From assembly GCA_003693705.1 (NCBI GenBank), contig RBZT01000435.1:124001-188000 (forward strand): DNA of 64,000 bases, in the 5' to 3' direction. The DNA is from Polymyxa betae A26-41. Its lineage: Eukaryota; Protista; Endomyxa: Phytomyxea. Shown here piece by piece: positions 2,625 through 26,539 of the stretch. The translations under genes were made by a program, and so were the position numbers. Under the pieces are notes generated by a model, which searched no databases, was not told the origin of the DNA, and was given only the letters and a program-made list of their open reading frames with translations. Positions within the stretch are counted from its first letter, which is position 1. The number at the start of each line of letters is the position of its first letter.

Positions 2625-3419
2625 ATGATCGCGGGAGGTGCTACTGATATCCATCAACGAGGGTCTCGTCGCCCTGATGGACCCCCATCCTTTGGTTCCA
2701 GGTCTTTCGAAAGCGACCCGGATAAAGTACACGCACGAACAAGGCGCCCATCTATGTCGATATTCCAGACCGGATCAACGGTTACTTTTGCAGCTATTGG
2801 TGCAGTATTGCTACTGATTCTAATTGGAGCCGTCATAATGATTTCCGATACCCGCGGGGATCAGTACCGAGTCGATGAGCGTACACCACTTGTTCCTGGA
2901 CCAAAAGCTAAAAAAATCGTGGAGGAAGCACTGAAGAAGAAAATAAGCGACGAAAGCGCTGAAGAATACGCACAACGAGTTCGTGAAAGATACTTGAACA
3001 GAATCGCCAAATTACGGGAAGAAGAAATGAAGAAATTAGCAGAAGATGCAGCGAAGAACGAACAACTTGAGCCGGAAGCTGCTCAAGAACCGCCGACTGA
3101 ACAAGTACATCAAGCACAACAAGCACAACCTCCTCAACCGCAGGCAGTACCTGCTGAGCCTGTACCCCAAGCTCAACCGCCCCATAATTCTTTGGAGGAA
3201 AGCTTAAGAGCCATTCATGAACAGCTTGCTAGACTTCAAGCAGGGTTCCTACAGAAACAGGTTGAGCAACAAACGTCACCATCACCTCCTCCAAGCTTAT
3301 CAGCACAGGAGGTACAACGACAGTCTGAACTCCAAGAGCTTGCCAGGAAAATGAATGAGCTGAGAGCACAAAGTGCTGCTCTCGAGGCTATGATCGAAGA
3401 AGCCAAAAACAAGCAATAA
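2625..3419 (+). CDS. Hypothetical single-pass membrane protein with coiled-coil and Pro/Gln-rich tail
   Basis: 264-aa ORF with one hydrophobic segment (FAAIGAVLLLILIGAVIMI), then DERTPLV and Glu/Lys/Gln-rich helices. Alternative start at 2754. Confidence 0.65.
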   Translation: MIAGGATDIHQRGSRRPDGPPSFGSRSFESDPDKVHARTRRPSMSIFQTGSTVTFAAIGAVLLLILIGAVIMISDTRGDQYRVDERTPLVPGPKAKKIVEEALKKKISDESAEEYAQRVRERYLNRIAKLREEEMKKLAEDAAKNEQLEPEAAQEPPTEQVHQAQQAQPPQPQAVPAEPVPQAQPPHNSLEESLRAIHEQLARLQAGFLQKQVEQQTSPSPPPSLSAQEVQRQSELQELARKMNELRAQSAALEAMIEEAKNKQ

Positions 3420-3491
3420 TTGCAAACCGGATATCGTGAGAATAAATTGATATATATCGAAGCATGTCGCTGTATAATCATCAGTTAGCAG

Positions 3492-5884
3492 TCAGATAAA
3501 GTGAGGATATCGTTCATTGAAGATCCAGCTTTTGACAGTACTGTCTTGCGAACAACTGCAAACAGAGACGTTAACAACTGGCTGAGACAGACACTCGCGG
3601 TCTCTACCTAAGTAGAAGCGACTGCGCCTTACACCATCTGGCACTAAAAACTGCACCTTTATGTCCAGGCAACCTTTGAACTAGTTCTCCGCTCTCAACA
3701 TCCCAGATATATACTTTTCCGTCATCTGAACCACCAAACACCAAGGCCTGTGAAAACTTGTCAATTCCATTAATATTATTTCCCATTGGAGCAGTTTACA
3801 TGGTTGGGACCGAAGGCTGCCCTAACAAAATTTTTACTGGTATTTTGATGGCCTTTTAGCCTTTGGAATGGTCTACCAACACGAACATCCCATAAACGGT
3901 TGCTATTATCTTTTGAGCAACTCAATAATTGAGTGCCAGACGCGTTCATCTGAACAGAGGTGACTTCGCCCAACAGCAAGCTGTATGTTTTTACGCAGAC
4001 TCCACTAACAACATCCCAAAACTTAATCGTATTGTCCTATCAATATACTCTGAATGAACTATCTGTCTAATATCCACAGCGAGATACTTTGGAGCCGGTT
4101 ACAACCAAATTGCCCCGTGGATTGAACACGACTGAAGCAACGGATGACTGGTGATCACGAAAGGTAACGACGTTAACTCCTTTCTCAATATCATATAATC
4201 GAGCAAGTTTGTCGTAGCCACCCGTCACTACGTGCGTCTAAACAAGGTTAAAACAGTAAACAGAAGTAAATCACATACGGTACCTGAGCTGGATGAAACT
4301 TGACTGAATAGACATCACCCCCGTGACCTCTCAAAGTAGTTAGGCAACCGATACTAGAAGGTTCATCAGAAGTAACGGCAGTGTCAGAGAGGTCGGTGCT
4401 CCATACCTGATCATCAATGTTAACTCTAAGAATCTGCCGGTTTTATGAACTCAAACCCTGACGCTGGAGTCGCCTGAGCACGACGCAACCATACTGCCAG
4501 AAGTATTGCTTGCAACATCCCATACTCGAGAGGTATGCCCAGTCCAAGTCCTGAGAAAGTATTTAATGACAGAACGAACAGAACGTAAAATGCAGACACA
4601 AGATACCTAAGGCATTGCCCAGAGCCAGTATCCCAAAGCCTAACTGTATTATCGCTCGAACCCGAAACAATTTGTAACCCCTCTTCGCCCACAAATTCAA
4701 CTCCTTTGACATTGTTTGTATGGCCAGAGAAAGTTCTCAGCACAACCTGGTGATAATATCAATGATTGCTGTCACATAAACGAAAGACTAACGTTGGGCA
4801 GGATAAAATTGCAATGATCAGAAAGCAAACTGATAACAGGGGTTTTGAGTTTCGGATGATACCGAGAAAACTCAATTTGGTACGCAACAGCTTGCTGAAT
4901 AACTGTTAAGTAAATGGGAGTTGCCTCAACCAGAGGAAAACCTGAAGCAGTTCTACAAGACGTCCTGATGGAACATCATCGCAACCTGTAATCAATGTAA
5001 GAACTTAACGCTGAAGTAACGCAAGTAATACAATCTACTTCGGATACTGTCAATATCATTCTGCAAAATTGCTTCAAATTGGCTGGCCAATTTCTCTCTG
5101 GAACACGATGAAGATATCTCAGGTATCCATATGTTTCAAACTGACCTTGATGCTGCTACTCCTAGCCAATCTTTGAAAGAAGCAGCTTCTTGGACAGAGC
5201 GGCACGTCAAAAGATAGCATAAGTCCTGGAACTCAGTAGGATCTGCCGTGGCTTCAAACGGTTTTAGATACTTATTTAGAAATGCAAACGCCTAAAAACA
5301 ACGTACTTGATATTTAGCAATAAGAATAAACTGAAATCAACCTTTTGCGTTTCCTGCTTATCTATGAGTTCAAGGTAGCTTTGCTTATATGTAGCATACA
5401 ATAGACATTTATGCAGAGCTAAAGGGATTTTCGAACACAAGTTTTCGACCTCGGCCCCTAATGCTGATTTTCAACGATCAGTATTTTGTGCGGAAATTGA
5501 ATACATTCTCCTGCAGTAATCGCGGCTTGAAGTTTTTTGATCCTGTTGCGACGCTGCAGTCCTTCCGAGATCTTTATATTCGCTTCGTCTTGAACAGTCA
5601 GCATCGATGAAAGGTAACCCTCGTCGCGAAGATACTGAATAATCAGTCGTGTTATATCCTGAATGATATTAATAGCCCAAGCTTCAGAAAACGGCATAGC
5701 TTACTCTTCTTATCCTGACATCCTCAGGATCGAACGTTTCATTTTTCGGATCGATTCGTTTGCGTCGCAAATCGACCTGCACGAGTCCAGCAGCCACCGC
5801 ATCGAACCTAGAAGCTCAGCTCGAAAAGCAGCTCTTTAGAAAGTCGCCTCTAACGTACGATAGCTGCTTCTCAGAATGACTCAT
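3492..5884 (-). CDS. LisH/CTLH-domain WD40-repeat protein (multi-exon)
   Basis: N-terminal LisH-like RLIIQYLRDEGY plus CTLH-like helices; many GH...WD repeats (GHTNNVKGV...SSDNTVRLWD, SKDNSNRLWD, GSDDGKVYIWD). Spliced start MSHSEKQLS at 5884, stop TGA at 3492. Confidence 0.85.
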
Positions 5885-15559: not shown

Positions 15560-20399
<4,840 letters not shown>

Positions 20400-20468
20400 T
20401 TTATATATTTGTCTTGTAAATGTATTTATGAGATTATCATTATTTACAGCATGTGCACGTTTTACAGT

Positions 20469-23400
20469 TCATGTTTGTGTTGGCCATGTGCATGAGAAAT
20501 TGCTCTTTGGGTTCCTTTCTTCATTCTCAATATCGGAAACTCCAGCGTGTGAGAACGAGGGAGAAGCCAAATATTGTGATTCTCGATCCACAACAGAAGA
20601 CGGCTCGCTAATCACAGATTCATCTTTAAGTGGAGGAAAGGCTCTACTTGGTAATTCAAAACTGGAAATCTGGTAAACCGTTACAGGCTCGGTGATTCCT
20701 TTATAACGATGCACTCCAAGATTGATAAACATTGCGGGGAATGATGAGCTCAAAGCATTATAGATTGACGAATCGCAAATGATTTGCCCACCGTAGGCAC
20801 TGTTTGCAATTCTTGATGCTCGATTTACAACGCCACCAAAATAATCCATTCGATTTGTCACCGGATTTTTCCGACAAATTGGAAACCCCAAATTAACTCC
20901 CATTTGAATCCTTATTCGAATTAGAACTAGTTTCTTGACATTAGGTGGTTCGAAGCTCTACCTTAGACCACAAAACACCAAACGTCCCGTCTTGTCGATT
21001 TCTTTGGCTGCCGATTGATGACACGATACAAGAGAATCAGGCCAGGCGCAAAACAGCAAAGCATTTTGCACAGCAATGCACCATGATATAGCTGCACTTG
21101 CGGAGGAAAAGGTTACCATGAAAGCGTCTCCTTCAGTCTTAACCTATATGTTTAACATTATTATTTACAGACTCCTCTTTTTCACAATAAATATTACTTC
21201 GTAACCCTTGTACACCTGCAACAGATCCCGCAAGATTTTATCATGGTAATATGATGCAATGTTCATCCCATCGGGCTCCTTTTCCCACAGTATGGATGAA
21301 TCTTGAATATTAGTAAATACACATGTGACCTACTGAACTCTTAGTCAAGACAAGACAATGAAACTGAATCCGACTTCTCCTGTTGGAGCAATTCCAGTGG
21401 GACTGGGGACAAAAGTTGGCGATAATGCTGACACCGTCGAACTGGATGTAATTCTTGACGACAGAGTTGATCCCTCTGCCAATCTGGCTGCTTCTTTCAA
21501 ATATTTAATCCACATATGCATTTGTTGTTCGGTATCTGCAGCAAGGTGGTGTATCTAAATTGGTATCAGAACGAGGCCAGCCATGTTAAATAGAAACATT
21601 ACAGACGTGATTTGAATCGGTTAATTCAAACCGGAATGAAAACTCAGAGTTCGTAGAGAGTCCACCGAAATCTTCTTTCCGTATGGTCTTGTATCGATTC
21701 AAGGAGGCATGAGCCCCAGAGTCGCGATTGATCGATATCGATCCTTTGTAGGACATTTGAAAGTACCAGAGTTTAAATCCATCCAAAACGAAATATCTTG
21801 ACCTCCAGCGCGGAAAATGAGGGCTCTTTTTCTTGAGCCACCCTTCCATACGTGTTTCAGGAGGGTCTAGCTGATGGCTGTAAGCAAAAGCAGCATTATT
21901 CAGAGCCTGATATTCGTTATTGGCAACCGGGATTTAACTGATGTTTTTACCTGCACCCAACGAGCCATTTGCTCTGGAGACGAAGCTGAGAGATAGAGGG
22001 GCTTTGCTCGATTCTTTGCTGCATAACTAAATGCAAAATTGGAGCGAGCATCTGGTGATAGATGGAATTCACACATATCGCAGACTTTTTCGGTAACAGT
22101 CTGCCCAGTGGCATCCTGAGCGAGAAGTTTACACCAGCATATCATGGAGCAAGATAAATACCGAAAATCGGGCATCTTGAGTTATACATTGGTTGCAGAA
22201 AACGTTATTGCAATATCCGCATTGCTTTCGGCTTCTGGTTAAAGAGAACGGTTTTAAACAATTGTTGCATTCTGGCATTAACTCTTGGTTGACTGCAGAA
22301 TTTCTTTTGATTTCTTCTATCAGCATTGGGAGCAAGTCTGTGCGTAAACGCATGGACACTTGGCGAAGTGCCTGATCGAATATGTGTGATGAAACTCGCC
22401 TTCGTTCTTGCCCTAAAGTTAGAGCATCGATTATGTTTTCCCTGGTTTCATGCCATAATTGAACCTGAAATGGAGGCTCAATCGAGAATGGAACTACTGA
22501 TTCAATCTGATTCTTACTTCAGATCCAGCGCCAGTAAAGATGTACTTTCTAGTTATTGATTTAGCCGATTCAAAAGCTTCCACACTTCTAGGAGGCAATT
22601 CCTGAAACGCTTTCACATCTAAACAAAAAGAAATCGATTCTTTTTGGTTTGTGAGACGAGAAAATCCTTTCAGTAAAGATCTCTATCAACGCTTCAAAAT
22701 CTTGTTGAGAAACGCATATCAGTACCAAACCTTAGAGGCATCCGAAAGAAATTCATCAAGGGTATGGTCGTACTGAACTCTTGGAAACTGCTTCACAAGT
22801 CCTTCTTCGATCGCCATTGTGCCTTTAGTGGAGATATCGAAATACTGCAGATTTGGCGGTACAATTCGGTAAAAGAACGGTTTCCAAAACTAGTTGGCAT
22901 CAATACACTATAAAATTCAGCATACAAGAAACTCATGGCTTACAATGCCAGCATTAGATCTATGAGAAAGCCATCCTTCAAGCAGAATTAACTGCTTATG
23001 GTCATTAATGTCGTCTGATACCGAATAGAGTGGACGCATTCTGGGAGCGCAATTTGATTTGTTATTGGGAGCATGCGCCGAGTAGTCATCACTTGAGTAC
23101 GAATCCTGATGATGGGACGAATCTGAATCGATATGTAAAGTTCTCGATGGCGGTGGATAACTGAATGATTGAAACCCAAACTGAGAGGGAGTTTTAGTCA
23201 AGAATCGCCTTTTCTTTGAGGCTAAGGTTTTCAAATTTGGCAAATCGCTTGTTACGACTGCCAGATCAGTGCTTGTCAGATGTTTGAAGCAAACCGCCAC
23301 CACTTTAACGCATTCCGCCCTTCTTACTAAACGAACCCTCAGATCGTTTTTATCTGCGATCTGTGTCGGTCAGACATTTGACAACTGGATTCTTGAAAAC

Positions 23401-23792
23401 TTTGATCGACCTTAAATAGAACTTCGTCAGCGTGATCGCAGAGGATGATGGCACAAATGTTTTTGATGTCGATGTCACGACGAGGTTTTCGGTATCGATC
23501 AGGCAAGAAGTGCAACAAGCTTGTGTTAGTGACAACTAAGTGACGCTGCTGCCACATTCCTCTCGAGTTGACTTTATAAACACTATCGGAGAAGTACAGA
23601 TTTTCTACCAACGTCGGACTCTCATCAAGGATCCCTTTAAAATGATTGAGCGATCCAGCTAGCACACAGGCCAGCATTAGTACGCTTCTCAGCATTGAAG
23701 AATTCCAGCAGCTGCTGATTGCCGGCGATGCGTAGGTAGTCGCCGTTGGCCGGCTGCAGTTCGTGCAGAGCCTGCCTGAAGTCGGTCGTCAT
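20469..23792 (-). CDS. Multidomain class III adenylyl cyclase-like protein: TH1-like, split PH with RGS and FYVE insert, PH, cyclase
   Basis: Spliced translation gives GDYL...[22 protein letters not shown] (TH1), LEGWLSHR (PH N-half), RGS-like helices, four CxxC pairs (FYVE), [14 protein letters not shown] (PH C-half), MEGWLKKK...QMHMWIKYL (PH), and cyclase motifs [38 protein letters not shown]. Confidence 0.85.
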
Positions 23793-24066
23793 CACGACAT
23801 CCCCAGGATAATGAATCTGATGAAAGAGAGTCTGGTGACAGAAGCACGGTATCGTTTCACAAGTATCGTCCAGTCAGTCGAGATTCCAGATAACTGGGAT
23901 GTCAGTCAGCCCCGCAGCACCAAGAGGCTACCTCATGACTCTGGAACACTGCTCTATAATTCATCTCTCGTGTCCTTTAAAGCTTCTAAGGGAGCGGGAC
24001 CTCTTATGCATCTCCATTAAAGTCTTCGACATGCTTTGAGAAGCAGACCCTCCCGAATATGGATCT

Positions 24067-24546
24067 TTAGAAGCTGATCTTTATGCCCATAGATTTACAG
24101 CTGGCGGCTATCGACTTCACAATCGCCTCAAGCGACTTGTCTTGCACGCCAGGGTCCGTTTGCTTAATCTTACCGATTTCATAGAGCTGGCGCACCGAGA
24201 CGGTCCCGGCAGAATCTTTACCTGGGAATTTCGCTCCTGTTTCAATACCAGCTGCTTGCTTCAGAAAATAGCTGGTCGGTGGCGATTTGATTTCCAGCGA
24301 GAAAGTCCGGTCTTCGAAAGCGGTGATCAAAACACGAAGCGGCACCGATTTCTTATAATCGACTGAAGCAGCGTTAAACGTCTAAGGCAACGGTTACTAG
24401 TGATAGCAACACACAAGCCGAATCGGAACCTTGCAGAACTCCATCATATTGAGACCGAGTGAACCAATAGCTTGACCAATAGCTGGAGATGGTGCCGCTT
24501 TACCGGCTGGCAATCTCATACGAACCAAAGCCTTCACAGCCGACAT
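24067..24546 (-). CDS. MRPL11: Mitochondrial ribosomal protein uL11m
   Basis: [28 protein letters not shown]|TFNA...[14 protein letters not shown]...SCKSMGI; one intron. Confidence 0.93.
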
Positions 24547-24781
24547 GACGATAACAAACTGCGCTACGAAGAAACCCTCAAAAAACTAAGTCACCAGAAG
24601 CACGCACCTGACAGTTCCTCAAAGTAAACGATGGCTCGAAATCGATCTATTAACTATAGCGAAGTTTGCTTTTCTGTTCCCTGTAAGGAAACTCTGGTGT
24701 TGAAACCAGTTAGGTTCAATGAGGCATTGTCACTTGGTGATAAAGTTTCAGGTTTCGCAAACTGTACAATGGAAATCTAAT

Positions 24782-26539
24782 TTATGGACATAAAGAGCGG
24801 TACTGGATGAAAGCTTGCAAGTTATCCCGAGCTTCCGCCGCCTCTTCAAACAGATCTTCATCAGCAACTTTCCACCGCCTGTCATCAGCCACAATGGCAC
24901 TCAGCACAGGCAGGAGATTGAGTCGGGCGATGGTCTTCTGATGAACTCCATCGTCAGCAAACATGTCCATCAGGCCGTTAACAGCCTCCAGAAAAACGCG
25001 AACAGAATCGTCTTGGACTCGGCTGAGGACGGCTTCCGCAACCAGATCGGCTCTGGCGGCATCTCCGGATCCGAATCTTACTAAAACCGCGACGAATTCT
25101 TGACGGACAGCTTCTGACGACGACCTGGTCGCTAACGACGTCATCATGTCCAGTTGGTCGTGTCGCAGGTGGCGTGGCGCCGATGCCAGAGAGAGCGACA
25201 GCAGTCGACCGGAAACCTCGAGCAGCGACAGCCGCGCCTTGGTTCGGTGAGATTCGCGTTCAATGACGTCGATCGCCAGATCGGAAACGTCGTGACCTGA
25301 AACGATCTCGCTCAATGCCAAATTGATCATCGCTTCAACGCAGCGTTCAATGGCGCCATAGATAAGATCTAGAACACGACCCCAATCGCCACTATCGAAT
25401 CGTTCGTCGTCGACAACGGTCCTGATGCGATCGGCAAGCACCGGAACGAGCTGAAGGATACCGGACAGATCGACGACTTCTTTCAGCGACCAAGTCGGTT
25501 GGTCTTCGTCGACACAAATGAGATTAGCGACGGTCTCAGCAGCGATCTGAACTGCGACGGCCTGAGCCCGGAACGTTTGTAGCAGATCTTGCCAAGCTTG
25601 GTCAACAGCTTCAGGCGCCAATCTGCCGTCAATGGATTCCTGAAAAATAGTATCGTTGTTATGTGCAGTACGTTGCCTTTCAAGCTCAGCGTTGATCTCA
25701 GCCTGCATGCGCTGGGCGTCCTGAACGAGTTGCCTCTTTGCCGCAGACAAATTGATGCTGGCACAAGCCGCCAGATGCGGTGCGATTTCCGATAACAAAG
25801 CCGGCGCCGAGGTTAGGCGGGCTACCGTCGCAAACAGCGCCGCAGTATGCGCCACGACCAGAATCGACTCGTGGCCGAATAGCGAGCGTAATGTCAGCAG
25901 GGTTTCGCTGAGAAGGACCTGGGCCAGATCCGGGCGGTCATCGACAACGTTTCGATACATCTCCAGTACGGCAATTATGGCATCGGTCGGGCCTGATAAG
26001 AATGACGACAGCTTCCAGATGGCACCGTTGCCGATCGACGCCGATTCGACGTCTTGTTCCGTCAGACAGGCAATCAGCGCAAGGACCTGGGCGTTCCACG
26101 GAGTTGGCGGAGAATTCGCCCGACCCAATAGCAACATAACGATATCGTCGAAGGCGTAGCGTGCGACGGCGGCGAACGCAGCACCGTCCATAACGGCGAG
26201 ATTCCGTAGCAGACCGGCCGCATGCGTCGCGACGTTACTGTCGGCGTCGACGATAAGCGGGAGGACGACCGGGACCAAGCCAGCCCGGATGAGTTCGGTG
26301 GCTGCTTGGCTGTCGCCGCAGACGATGTTAGAGAGCGCCGAGCAGCTTATGGCGCGATGCAGGGCGACGTGGCTGGATAAATTCTCGACAACGTTGCGAT
26401 AACGGGCCGGTATTGATGATGGCACCGAACAAATCGGGAATGGGTTTGTAGAGCCCATGGGAATATCAGCGTCGGCCGATTTGGCACCGGGTTTCGTGCC
26501 CGCACGACGCCGGGCCTGGCGACGTTTCGCTGAACCCAT
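24782..26539 (-). CDS. HEATR3: HEAT/ARM-repeat protein HEATR3/Syo1 (uL5/uL18 import adaptor)
   Basis: Intronless 585 aa with basic NLS-like N-terminus MGSAKRRQARRR, ARM motif AAGLLRNL, and C-terminal EAVNGLMDMFADD...NLQAFIQY typical of Syo1/HEATR3. Confidence 0.78.
   Translation of the reverse strand: MGSAKRRQARRRAGTKPGAKSADADIPMGSTNPFPICSVPSSIPARYRNVVENLSSHVALHRAISCSALSNIVCGDSQAATELIRAGLVPVVLPLIVDADSNVATHAAGLLRNLAVMDGAAFAAVARYAFDDIVMLLLGRANSPPTPWNAQVLALIACLTEQDVESASIGNGAIWKLSSFLSGPTDAIIAVLEMYRNVVDDRPDLAQVLLSETLLTLRSLFGHESILVVAHTAALFATVARLTSAPALLSEIAPHLAACASINLSAAKRQLVQDAQRMQAEINAELERQRTAHNNDTIFQESIDGRLAPEAVDQAWQDLLQTFRAQAVAVQIAAETVANLICVDEDQPTWSLKEVVDLSGILQLVPVLADRIRTVVDDERFDSGDWGRVLDLIYGAIERCVEAMINLALSEIVSGHDVSDLAIDVIERESHRTKARLSLLEVSGRLLSLSLASAPRHLRHDQLDMMTSLATRSSSEAVRQEFVAVLVRFGSGDAARADLVAEAVLSRVQDDSVRVFLEAVNGLMDMFADDGVHQKTIARLNLLPVLSAIVADDRRWKVADEDLFEEAAEARDNLQAFIQYRSLCP

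What the first reader, a model, noticed from the sequence alone, without database searches (positions are those of the whole stretch)
20469..23792. One-protein signalling module: TH1-like + split PH + RGS + FYVE + PH + adenylyl cyclase
Seen: joining the short minus-strand exons at canonical GT-AG sites gives one frame with a myosin-I TH1-like domain (~23270-23750), PH N-half (~22800-22990), RGS-like domain (~22310-22760), FYVE-type finger (~22065-22275), PH C-half (~21945-22045), complete PH (~21490-21850) and a fungal/kinetoplastid-type class III cyclase (~20630-21390). No TM segment is evident. Known: RGS domains bind activated G-alpha; PH, FYVE and TH1 bind anionic lipids; class III cyclases make cAMP. 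Inference: a soluble, membrane-recruited cyclase that reads G-alpha state and phosphoinositides directly. I do not recognise this architecture from any characterised protein, and the ORF track shows only fragments of it.
Basis: partly seen in the sequence, partly recalled or inferred. Interest (0 to 1): 0.82.

Follow-up and report, generated by a model that had tools for sequence, protein, structure and literature searches.

The report
RGS-bearing soluble adenylyl cyclase, Polymyxa
This is a real, expressed 12-exon gene of a plasmodiophorid plant-root parasite that joins lipid-binding domains, a G-protein-docking (RGS) domain and a cAMP-making cyclase in one soluble protein. The same design is already deposited, unstudied, from two sister species, and this copy alone has lost a catalytic aspartate.

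Summary
On the minus strand at 20469-23792, 12 exons and 11 GT-AG introns (44-54 nt) give one 925-codon frame. Spliced contigs from three independent studies show all 11 joints, and one 2,933-nt contig spans the whole frame.

The domain order is TH1-like, then a PH domain split by a nested RGS plus an eight-Cys FYVE-like finger, then a second PH, then a trypanosome-type class III adenylyl cyclase. There is no TM segment.

It is not unique. Identical architectures are deposited as unstudied 'Adenylate cyclase' entries from Spongospora subterranea and Plasmodiophora brassicae, and variants occur in other Cercozoa. The assembly statistics match the Polymyxa betae draft genome. I found no paper describing the family.

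The functional reading needs tempering:
- The finger lacks the PI3P motif.
- The RGS lacks both GAP asparagines.
- The split PH has lost its basic motif.
- The first metal-binding Asp of the cyclase is Asn here (Asp in 17/17 relatives).

A paralogue on contig C621 has the opposite single defect (Asn to His). That suggests, but does not prove, a C1/C2-like heterodimer.

Earlier notes of this scan flagged the nested domains and the Asn on this same stretch, not on other DNA. Exons were never joined; whole-protein tests used public orthologues.

The parts
20469..23792 (-). Whole coding region: 12 exons, 11 GT-AG introns, 925 codons plus TGA stop (20471-20469). The transcript runs at least from 23838 to 20360.
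   Evidence: Phase and stop check. All 11 joints and a spanning 2,933-nt contig.
23211..23792 (-). TH1-like domain (exons 1, 2 and the first ~50 codons of exon 3): a PH-like core with myosin-I-tail flanks and no motor.
   Evidence: Exon 2 alone scores 23.1 bits for Myosin_TH1. Orthologues score 36.4-76.9 bits, above the 31.1 cut-off. In the orthologue model the Myo1c tail 4r8g aligns at Z 12.7 over 133 residues.
22998..23210 (-). Ser/Asp/His-rich low-complexity linker inside exon 3.
   Evidence: Translation of exon 3. Poorly aligned and variable in length among relatives.
22773..22997 (-). N-terminal half of split PH domain PH1 (strands 1-5), crossing intron 22943-22890. Its basic motif is degraded: WKPFFY here against WRPRY/FY in the orthologues.
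   Evidence: Alignment A1. It cross-matches the N-half of PH2. Orthologue model strands 14-62.
22297..22772 (-). RGS domain, cut by two introns (22730-22683 and 22517-22465). It has Ser at the RGS4-Asn88 position, Gln at Asn128, Asp at Asp163 and Met at Arg167.
   Evidence: Exon 5 hits RGS at 15.7-18.4 bits. Orthologues score 34.3-70.2 bits. Orthologue model against RGS3/RGS4: Z 18.0/17.8, rmsd 1.6-1.8; Foldseek target TM-score 0.78-0.89. Residue mapping.
22056..22287 (-). FYVE-like zinc finger with four CxxC pairs, crossing intron 22161-22116. It lacks WxxD and R(R/K)HHCR, and has KVC in place of RVC.
   Evidence: Pfam FYVE 33.8-34.1 bits, above the 27.8 cut-off. Alignment A1.
21951..22055 (-). 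C-terminal half of split PH domain PH1 (two strands plus the C-terminal helix).
   Evidence: Exon 7 matches Pfam PH profile positions 61-98 and the C-half of PH2. In the orthologue model, whole PH domains (TAPP1, 97 of 103 residues, Z 13.8; split PH of PLC-gamma1, Z 13.6) align across both halves.
21483..21852 (-). Complete PH domain PH2, crossing intron 21606-21555. It carries the K...W-R-S-R-Y-F basic motif typical of phosphoinositide-binding PH domains.
   Evidence: Pfam PH 30.3 bits, above the 25.1 cut-off. Exon 8 and 9 translations. Assigning the motif to a lipid-binding type rests on my own knowledge.
20661..21389 (-). Class III cyclase catalytic domain (exons 10-12, three introns). Lys, the second metal Asp, the substrate Asp, Asn and Arg are all present.
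   Evidence: 46.1 bits in the six-frame search and 29.2 bits for exon 12 alone. The orthologue domain matches T. brucei GRESAG4.3/4.1 at E 1.5e-28. Residue table.
21309..21311 (-). Codon 681, AAT: Asn at the position of the first metal-binding Asp (motif FTNI instead of FTD[IV]).
   Evidence: Asp in 17 of 17 family proteins. No differing base at this place in contigs of three studies. Codon number.
20472..20660 (-). C-terminal tail with no recognised domain.
   Evidence: No Pfam hit beyond the cyclase. Weakly conserved among orthologues.

Best explanation
Shown: this is one expressed gene of a plasmodiophorid (the assembly statistics equal the Polymyxa betae draft genome). It encodes a 925-residue soluble protein with this domain order: TH1-like, PH1 N-half, RGS, eight-Cys FYVE-like finger, PH1 C-half, PH2, then a trypanosome-type class III adenylyl cyclase domain. 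It is the orthologue of the unstudied 'Adenylate cyclase' entries of Spongospora subterranea and Plasmodiophora brassicae. It belongs to a wider cercozoan/environmental family of TH1-PH-cyclase proteins in which the first PH domain may or may not carry an inserted signalling module (RGS plus finger in some; one relative carries a DEP domain whose position I did not map).

Inferred: the three PH-like modules hold the protein at an anionic membrane. PH2 is the best candidate because it keeps the basic motif. The RGS bundle docks on a GTP-bound G-alpha, more as an effector-type contact than as an efficient GAP. Membrane and G-alpha recruitment bring two cyclase domains together, and class III catalysis needs such a dimer.

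In this species the first metal-binding Asp is Asn, so a homodimer would have two crippled sites. I think the most likely arrangement (about 35-40%) is a heterodimer with the TH1-PH-PH-cyclase paralogue on contig C621. That paralogue keeps both metal Asp residues but has His at the ribose-orienting Asn. The pair would have one canonical site and one dead site, as in mammalian C1/C2, and the window's protein would be the G-alpha-sensing half.
For: Gene and transcript.

Orthology: all 12 exons are colinear with P0027 residues 1-909 at 32-78% identity, and with P0002.

Architecture over Pfam cut-offs in P0002, P0027 and P0031.

Nested RGS and finger inside one PH fold.

RGS fold. TH1-like fold.

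Cyclase class. Adenine-specifying Lys/Asp and the Asn/Arg pair intact; Asp1 changed to Asn only here (17/17 relatives have Asp).

The Asn is not an assembly error, and all five differences between isolates in this gene are synonymous.

Paralogue with intact Asp/Asp/Lys/Asp/Arg but Asn changed to His (15/15 relatives have Asn).

In class III cyclases the metal Asp residues come from one monomer and the Asn/Arg from the other. Mammalian C1/C2 has one live site and one dead site: PMC2576301.

G-alpha genes are abundant in this genome. Organism: 1,001 contigs and 27.09 Mb, matching PMC6328671.
Against: No biochemical data exist for any family member.

The complementary pattern is weak statistically. 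If each paralogue took one random hit among the six catalytic residues, the hits would fall in opposite classes 44% of the time (my own calculation, noted).

The two sister species' orthologues keep the Asp, and no copy of the C621-type gene was found for them. A heterodimer is therefore not an ancestral requirement.

Asn can still ligate a metal, so some homodimer activity is possible.

The RGS lacks both asparagines that classical GAPs use, and also Arg167, so even G-alpha binding is unproven.

Whole-protein profile and fold tests were done on orthologues, not on the window's own joined product.
Confidence: 0.6

Rival explanations
1. It is a weakly active or metal-shifted homodimer. The protein dimerises with itself as its orthologues presumably do, and Asn681 still helps hold a metal (perhaps Mn2+), giving a low-output cyclase that membrane and G-alpha recruitment still regulate.
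For: Five of six catalytic residues are intact. Polymorphism is synonymous only, which suggests a constrained, working gene. The orthologues carry a fully canonical site and no known partner.
Against: The Asp is invariant in 17 of 17 relatives and is one of the two metal ligands of all class III cyclases (PMC2576301). From my own knowledge, substitutions there cost orders of magnitude in activity.
Confidence: 0.25
2. It is a pseudo-cyclase. In this species the protein has become a non-catalytic scaffold or regulator: a membrane and G-alpha adaptor, or a subunit that poisons other cyclases by pairing with them. Several ligand-contact residues are decaying together.
For: In this species alone, key residues have changed in several domains: cyclase Asp to Asn, the PH1 basic Arg to Phe, and RGS Arg167 to Met where Spongospora and Plasmodiophora keep Arg.
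Against: The other five catalytic residues, including the Asn/Arg pair and the adenine-specifying Lys/Asp, are kept. A dead domain would not be expected to keep them. The gene is expressed and shows only synonymous variation.
Confidence: 0.15
3. It is a gene-model artefact: two or more neighbouring genes (for example a TH1/PH/RGS/FYVE gene and a PH-cyclase gene) joined wrongly by reading across introns.
For: None after testing. The ORF list shows only fragments.
Against: A single 2,933-nt contig carries all 11 joints and both UTRs. The same joints appear in three studies. Three full-length orthologues have the same order and length.
Confidence: 0.01

Closest known systems
Spongospora subterranea A0A0H5RBL9 (969 aa) and Plasmodiophora brassicae A0A3P3YK01 / SPR00522.1 (950 aa), auto-named 'Adenylate cyclase'
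   Same: Orthologues. All 12 exons are colinear, the five Pfam families occur in the same order, length is similar, and RGS plus finger are nested in the same split PH.
   Different: Both keep Asp at the first metal site (FTDI/FTDV), the WRPR basic motif in PH1 and Arg at the RGS4-Arg167 position. The window's protein has Asn, Phe and Met there. Neither has been studied, as far as my searches show.
Trypanosoma brucei receptor-type adenylyl cyclases GRESAG4.1 and 4.3 (PDB 1fx2, 1fx4)
   Same: Closest solved catalytic domains (E 1.5e-28, aligned over about 195 residues, including the insertion between the two halves of the fold). They are also adenine-specific class III enzymes that need dimerisation.
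   Different: The trypanosome enzymes are single-pass membrane receptors with an extracellular domain. This protein is soluble and has an intracellular TH1/PH/RGS/finger/PH regulatory region instead.
Mammalian membrane adenylyl cyclase C1/C2 pair and soluble guanylyl cyclase alpha/beta
   Same: This is the logic of the proposed heterodimer: metal Asp residues from one half, Asn/Arg and base-specifying residues from the other, giving one live and one dead site (PMC2576301). Control by G-alpha.
   Different: In mammals the two halves sit in one chain, or are long-diverged subunits with many losses. Here each paralogue has a single substitution, and the pairing is only inferred. G-alpha would dock on a fused RGS domain, not on the catalytic core.
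Split PH domains of PLC-gamma1 (2fjl), PIKE (2rlo) and syntrophin
   Same: One PH fold is assembled from two sequence halves with other domains inserted in a loop. PLC-gamma1's split PH aligns at Z 13.6 across both halves of the orthologue model.
   Different: The inserts differ: SH2-SH2-SH3 in PLC-gamma1 and PDZ in syntrophin (my own knowledge), against RGS plus a zinc finger here. I found no report of such an insert.
RGS-domain effectors and adaptors: SNX13/14/25 (RGS-PX), Entamoeba RGS-RhoGEF, p115/PDZ-RhoGEF
   Same: An RGS or RGS-like bundle is combined with lipid-binding modules and an output enzyme, so that an activated G-alpha acts on the enzyme directly. SNX13, SNX25 and EhRGS-RhoGEF appear among the structural matches (Z 14-15).
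   Different: The output here is a nucleotide cyclase, not a RhoGEF or a sorting nexin. The best structural matches are classical R4 RGS domains (Z 18), yet the GAP asparagines are missing.

Membership tests
Class III nucleotide cyclase (Pfam PF00211) | Profile match over the curated cut-off (21.9 bits) | tested here: met
   46.1 bits in the six-frame search. Exon 12 alone scores 29.2 bits.
Class III nucleotide cyclase (Pfam PF00211) | Two metal-binding Asp residues | tested here: not met
   The first is Asn (FTNI, codon 681). The second is present (KTEGD). Relatives have Asp in 17 of 17.
Class III nucleotide cyclase (Pfam PF00211) | Ribose-orienting Asn and transition-state Arg four residues later | tested here: met
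   VNRASR in exon 12 aligns without gaps to the family.
Class III nucleotide cyclase (Pfam PF00211) | Adenine-specifying Lys and Asp (adenylyl rather than guanylyl cyclase) | tested here: met
   The Lys of KTEGD and the Asp of MDYFG are present. Assigning their roles rests on my own knowledge of class III enzymes.
Class III nucleotide cyclase (Pfam PF00211) | Dimerisation and cAMP synthesis | not testable with these tools
   Needs enzyme assays.
RGS domain (Pfam PF00615) | Profile match over the cut-off (23.9 bits) | tested here: inconclusive
   The window's exon pieces score 15.7-18.4 bits because two introns cut the domain. Colinear orthologues score 34.3, 47.1 and 70.2 bits.
RGS domain (Pfam PF00615) | Nine-helix RGS bundle | tested here: met
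   Orthologue model (pLDDT 80-96 in this part) against RGS3 (Z 18.0) and RGS4 (Z 17.8). Foldseek gives RGS1/8/16 at rmsd 1.3 over 115 residues. The window's exons 5 and 6 are 70% and 49% identical to the modelled protein.
RGS domain (Pfam PF00615) | GAP residues equivalent to RGS4 Asn88 and Asn128 | tested here: not met
   Ser and Gln in the window. Thr/Phe in both plasmodiophorid orthologues. The non-plasmodiophorid relatives P0031 and P0020 keep Asn at the first position and Ser at the second. RGS4 numbering is from my own knowledge.
RGS domain (Pfam PF00615) | Binding to activated G-alpha | not testable with these tools
   G-alpha genes exist in the genome. Binding needs a pull-down.
FYVE finger (Pfam PF01363) | Profile match over the cut-off (27.8 bits) and eight zinc-binding Cys | tested here: met
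   33.8-34.1 bits. Four CxxC pairs across exons 6 and 7, conserved in the family.
FYVE finger (Pfam PF01363) | PI3P-binding signature: WxxD, R(R/K)HHCR, RVC | tested here: not met
   SRKQCG stands in place of RRHHCR, there is no WxxD, and KVC replaces RVC. All family members lack the His pair. The motif definition is from my own knowledge.
PH domain (Pfam PF00169) | PH2: profile match over the cut-off (25.1 bits) and a basic K..(K/R)xR motif | tested here: met
   30.3 bits for exon 8. KKK...WRSRYF is visible in exon 8.
PH domain (Pfam PF00169) | PH1: two sequence halves forming one PH fold around the insert | tested here: met
   Exon 7 matches profile positions 61-98. The halves cross-match the halves of PH2. 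Whole PH domains align over residues 13-303 of the orthologue model with 92-100 residues, Z 12-14.
PH domain (Pfam PF00169) | PH1: basic lipid-binding motif | tested here: not met
   WKPFFY in the window against WRPRYY/WRPRFY in P0002/P0027.
Myosin TH1 (Pfam PF06017) | Profile match over the cut-off (31.1 bits) | tested here: inconclusive
   Exon 2 alone scores 23.1 bits, E 6.6e-5. Orthologues and relatives score 36.4-76.9 bits.
Myosin TH1 (Pfam PF06017) | TH1 fold (PH-like core plus flanks, as in the myosin-1c tail) | tested here: met
   Orthologue model core pLDDT 88-95. 4r8g aligns at Z 12.7 over 133 residues (model 9-162), longer than plain PH domains (about 93 residues). It ranks fourth in Foldseek.
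Myosin TH1 (Pfam PF06017) | Attachment to a myosin-I motor and neck | tested here: not met
   The domain starts at residue 1 of the protein. No motor is present in any family member.
Plasmodiophorid TH1-PH[RGS-finger]-PH-cyclase orthogroup | End-to-end colinearity and the same domain order | tested here: met
   Exons 1-12 map in order to P0027 residues 1-909 and to P0002 residues 7-913.

The most novel reading that the evidence does not exclude
In Polymyxa betae two paralogous TH1-PH-cyclase proteins have each taken one complementary hit. The RGS-bearing one lost a metal Asp; the RGS-less one lost the ribose-orienting Asn. They now work only as a heterodimer with a single active site. This would be a recent, independent re-invention of the C1/C2 arrangement, caught at the one-substitution-each stage, in which the RGS-bearing subunit brings G-alpha input straight to the cyclase.
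Probability: 0.3. Interest if true: 0.75.

Novelty: new variant of a known kind. Interest (0 to 1): 0.55.

Why it matters
In animals, G-alpha subunits act on adenylyl cyclase by touching the catalytic core, and RGS proteins are separate. Here, in a small rhizarian lineage, an RGS domain is built into the cyclase polypeptide, nested together with a zinc finger inside a PH domain. No member of this family has been studied, so it offers a compact, soluble model for how G-protein state and membrane lipids could be wired to cAMP synthesis.

The family also shows that one PH-domain loop can accept an inserted signalling module (the RGS plus finger).

The P. betae copy and its paralogue are a natural test case for how homodimeric cyclases turn into asymmetric heterodimers.

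Plasmodiophorids are uncultivable crop-root parasites and virus vectors with greatly expanded RGS and G-alpha gene sets, so their cAMP signalling is of practical interest too.

Tried and rejected
- Exact-sequence look-up of the neighbouring 585-aa ORF, hoping for a public annotation: nothing on record.
- Raw-read metatranscriptome X23: no reads on the locus, so it is no test.
- Pfam on single exons leaves TH1 and RGS below cut-off.
- Sequence search of the orthologue's RGS against PDB gives only E 0.2-0.8. The fold search was needed to settle it.
- Literature: five searches on Plasmodiophora, cyclase, RGS, FYVE and Rhizaria found no description of the architecture. The Acrasis and Naegleria papers were checked and are irrelevant to it.
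- Search for Plasmodiophora or Spongospora copies of the C621-type paralogue, using P0033: only environmental sequences came back. Whether the Asn-to-His change is species-specific within plasmodiophorids stays open.
- I considered treating the complementary defects as statistically telling and rejected that: the chance expectation is 0.44.
- I considered a guanylyl cyclase and rejected it, because the Lys/Asp pair specifies adenine.
- I considered a TM anchor and rejected it.
Full report
**Method note.** Each exon was searched by reference on its own. Every whole-protein step (full-length Pfam scans, structure prediction, fold searches) was done on public orthologues returned by the search tools. 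The reads tool was given 3,651 letters.

**1. The observation.**

The ORF list for 19500-25000 shows only fragments on the minus strand. Three-frame translation shows class III cyclase motifs spread over several open stretches. Reading the minus strand gave 12 exons joined by 11 GT..AG introns of 44-54 nt. A phase-only check found no internal stop, and 2,778 coding bases give 925 codons plus TGA at 20471-20469.

Public runs that hold 70-74% of the locus's words were laid on it; the exons make up 76% of the stretch. Contigs from three studies (X3, X8, X12) carry all 11 joints at exactly the predicted bases. One X8 contig of 2,933 nt runs from 20360 to about 23838 with every intron removed, covering the 3' UTR, the whole frame and 46 nt of 5' UTR. 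DNA-type runs X1 and X2 hold 93-100% of the words, which is the intron-containing form. So this is one gene and one transcript.

**2. The domains.**

On single exons, FYVE (33.8-34.1 bits), PH (30.3) and the cyclase (29.2) pass Pfam's cut-offs. TH1 (23.1) and RGS (15.7-18.4) stay below them because introns cut those domains.

A search of 1.84 billion representative proteins with exon 6, which spans the RGS-FYVE junction, found a 950-aa protein aligned over the whole exon. Scanned as a whole, that protein has TH1 36.4, RGS 47.1, FYVE 29.5, PH 79.4 (three stretches) and cyclase 72.1 bits, all over the cut-offs. It is Plasmodiophora brassicae A0A3P3YK01 / SPR00522.1, auto-named 'Adenylate cyclase'.

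A word-based search added three kinds of relative:
- Spongospora subterranea A0A0H5RBL9 (969 aa) and an unnamed EukProt protein, both with the same five families.
- Relatives in which RGS falls below cut-off or is not detected, or which lack both RGS and the finger, one of them from a Cercozoa MAG.
- A 528-aa protein with the TH1-PH[RGS-finger] cassette and no cyclase.

All 12 exons map in order onto the Spongospora protein (residues 1-909, 32-78% identity) and onto the Plasmodiophora protein. The gene is therefore their orthologue.

The assembly (1,001 contigs, 27,085,814 bases) matches the published Polymyxa betae draft genome (1,001 contigs, 27,085,946 bp, GC 45.1%; PMC6328671).

**3. The nested domains.**

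The family alignment shows PH strands 1-4, then the RGS, then an eight-Cys finger, then the remaining PH strands and C-terminal helix. An AlphaFold2 model of the Spongospora segment gave five strands, a confident helical bundle (pLDDT 80-96), a poorly modelled finger (no zinc was present), then two strands and a long helix.

The bundle matches classical R4 RGS domains: Foldseek target TM-score 0.78-0.89 at rmsd about 1.3 Å, with RGS3 at Z 18.0 and RGS4 at Z 17.8. Complete PH domains superpose using both halves: TAPP1 aligns 97 of 103 residues at Z 13.8, and the known split PH of PLC-gamma1 reaches Z 13.6, both spanning model residues about 13-303.

The N-terminal domain folds as a PH-like sandwich. 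The myosin-1c tail gives the longest superposition of any hit (133 residues, Z 12.7) and ranks fourth in Foldseek. No TM segment exists.

**4. What the residues say.**

*Cyclase.* The nearest solved structures are the T. brucei GRESAG4.3 and 4.1 domains (E 1.5e-28), so 'kinetoplastid-type' is right. Lys and Asp specify adenine. Of the six canonical residues, five are present. In 17 of 17 family proteins that residue is Asp. Contigs of three studies show no other base there, and all five differences between isolates elsewhere in the gene are synonymous. The change is therefore real, and the gene still looks constrained.

*Finger.* All eight Cys are present, but SRKQCG stands where PI3P-binding FYVE domains have R(R/K)HHCR, and there is no WxxD. 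The whole family shares this. By my own knowledge of the motif, it should be called FYVE-like and is not expected to bind PI3P.

*RGS.* Ser and Gln stand at the positions of RGS4 Asn88 and Asn128, and Met at Arg167. The two sister species have Thr and Phe at the first two. The non-plasmodiophorid relatives keep SEEN-type motifs with Ser at the second position. Efficient GAP activity is doubtful, and binding is untested.

*PH domains.* PH2 keeps a K...WRSRYF basic motif. PH1 has WKPFFY where the sister species have WRPRY/FY.

**5. A paralogue with the opposite defect.**

Six-frame searches of the genome found a cyclase hit and a TH1 hit (33.6 bits) 2 kb apart on the same strand of contig C621. 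Read through by eye, it is a TH1-PH-PH-cyclase gene without RGS or finger.

Aligned without gaps, its cyclase keeps both metal Asp residues, Lys, Asp and Arg, but has His at the ribose-orienting Asn. That residue is Asn in all 15 family proteins that cover it.

In class III cyclases the metal Asp residues of one monomer face the Asn/Arg of the other, and mammalian C1/C2 has one live and one dead site (PMC2576301). A heterodimer of the two P. betae proteins would likewise have one fully canonical site and one doubly defective site.

This is an inference with several limits:
- Two random single hits would be complementary 44% of the time.
- The paralogue's transcript was not checked.
- No sister-species copy of the paralogue was found.

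**6. How it most likely works.**

Shown: a soluble, expressed, multi-domain class III cyclase subunit with three PH-like modules and an RGS fold, in a genome with many G-alpha loci and at least 37 RGS loci over cut-off.

Inferred:
- Recruitment to anionic membranes, with PH2 as the best candidate.
- Docking of the RGS on an activated G-alpha as an effector-type contact.
- Catalysis only on pairing of cyclase domains, which in this species most likely means pairing with the C621 paralogue (about 35-40%).

The alternatives are a weak homodimer (about 25%) and a non-catalytic scaffold (about 15%).

**7. Novelty.**

The architecture is not new to the databases, because two sister species have it under an automatic name. 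However, I found no characterised member and no paper on it in seven library searches, and most subscription journals are not covered by that library. I rate it a new variant of a known kind: a class III adenylyl cyclase with an unstudied built-in RGS and lipid-binding regulatory region.

What this analysis adds:
- Transcript proof of the gene model.
- The fold-level demonstration of the nested insert.
- The degraded binding motifs.
- The species-specific Asp-to-Asn change with its complementary paralogue.

Earlier notes of this scan (s1-674135, s1-674254) had flagged the nesting and the Asn on this same stretch, not on other DNA.

Noticed in passing
L026 (= G000:C621:165500-174500), minus strand, about 3230-5830: Paralogous TH1-PH-PH-cyclase gene without RGS or finger. 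Its cyclase has His at the otherwise invariant ribose-orienting Asn and keeps the other five catalytic residues. A G-alpha gene lies about 12 kb away on the same contig (C621:182961-184232).
   Followed up: partly
window 20360-20399: This gene's 3' UTR (the X8 contig reaches 20360) overlaps the last codons of the convergent plus-strand SNF2/Ino80-like gene, whose open frame ends at 20399. The 6,461-nt X3 contig runs on from one gene into the other.
   Followed up: no
window 23792-23800: A three-codon upstream ORF (ATG TCG TGA) overlaps the main start codon in the arrangement TGATG, inside the transcribed 5' UTR.
   Followed up: no
G000, many contigs (for example C355:38660-95893, C620:15942-39423, C931:16184-87735): Very large RGS gene set for a 27-Mb genome: 37 six-frame matches over Pfam's cut-off, several in clusters. 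There are also at least eight to ten G-alpha loci.
   Followed up: no
P0020 (528 aa) and P0149 (1,232 aa), environmental sequences: The TH1-PH[RGS-finger] cassette also exists without any cyclase (P0020). One TH1-PH-cyclase relative (P0149) carries a DEP domain; its position relative to the PH domains was not mapped.
   Followed up: partly
runs X3-X12: Spliced transcripts of this parasite gene turn up in runs filed under three other organism labels (coded B, C, D). These are presumably infected host-root samples. Such runs could serve as an expression resource for this unannotated genome.
   Followed up: no
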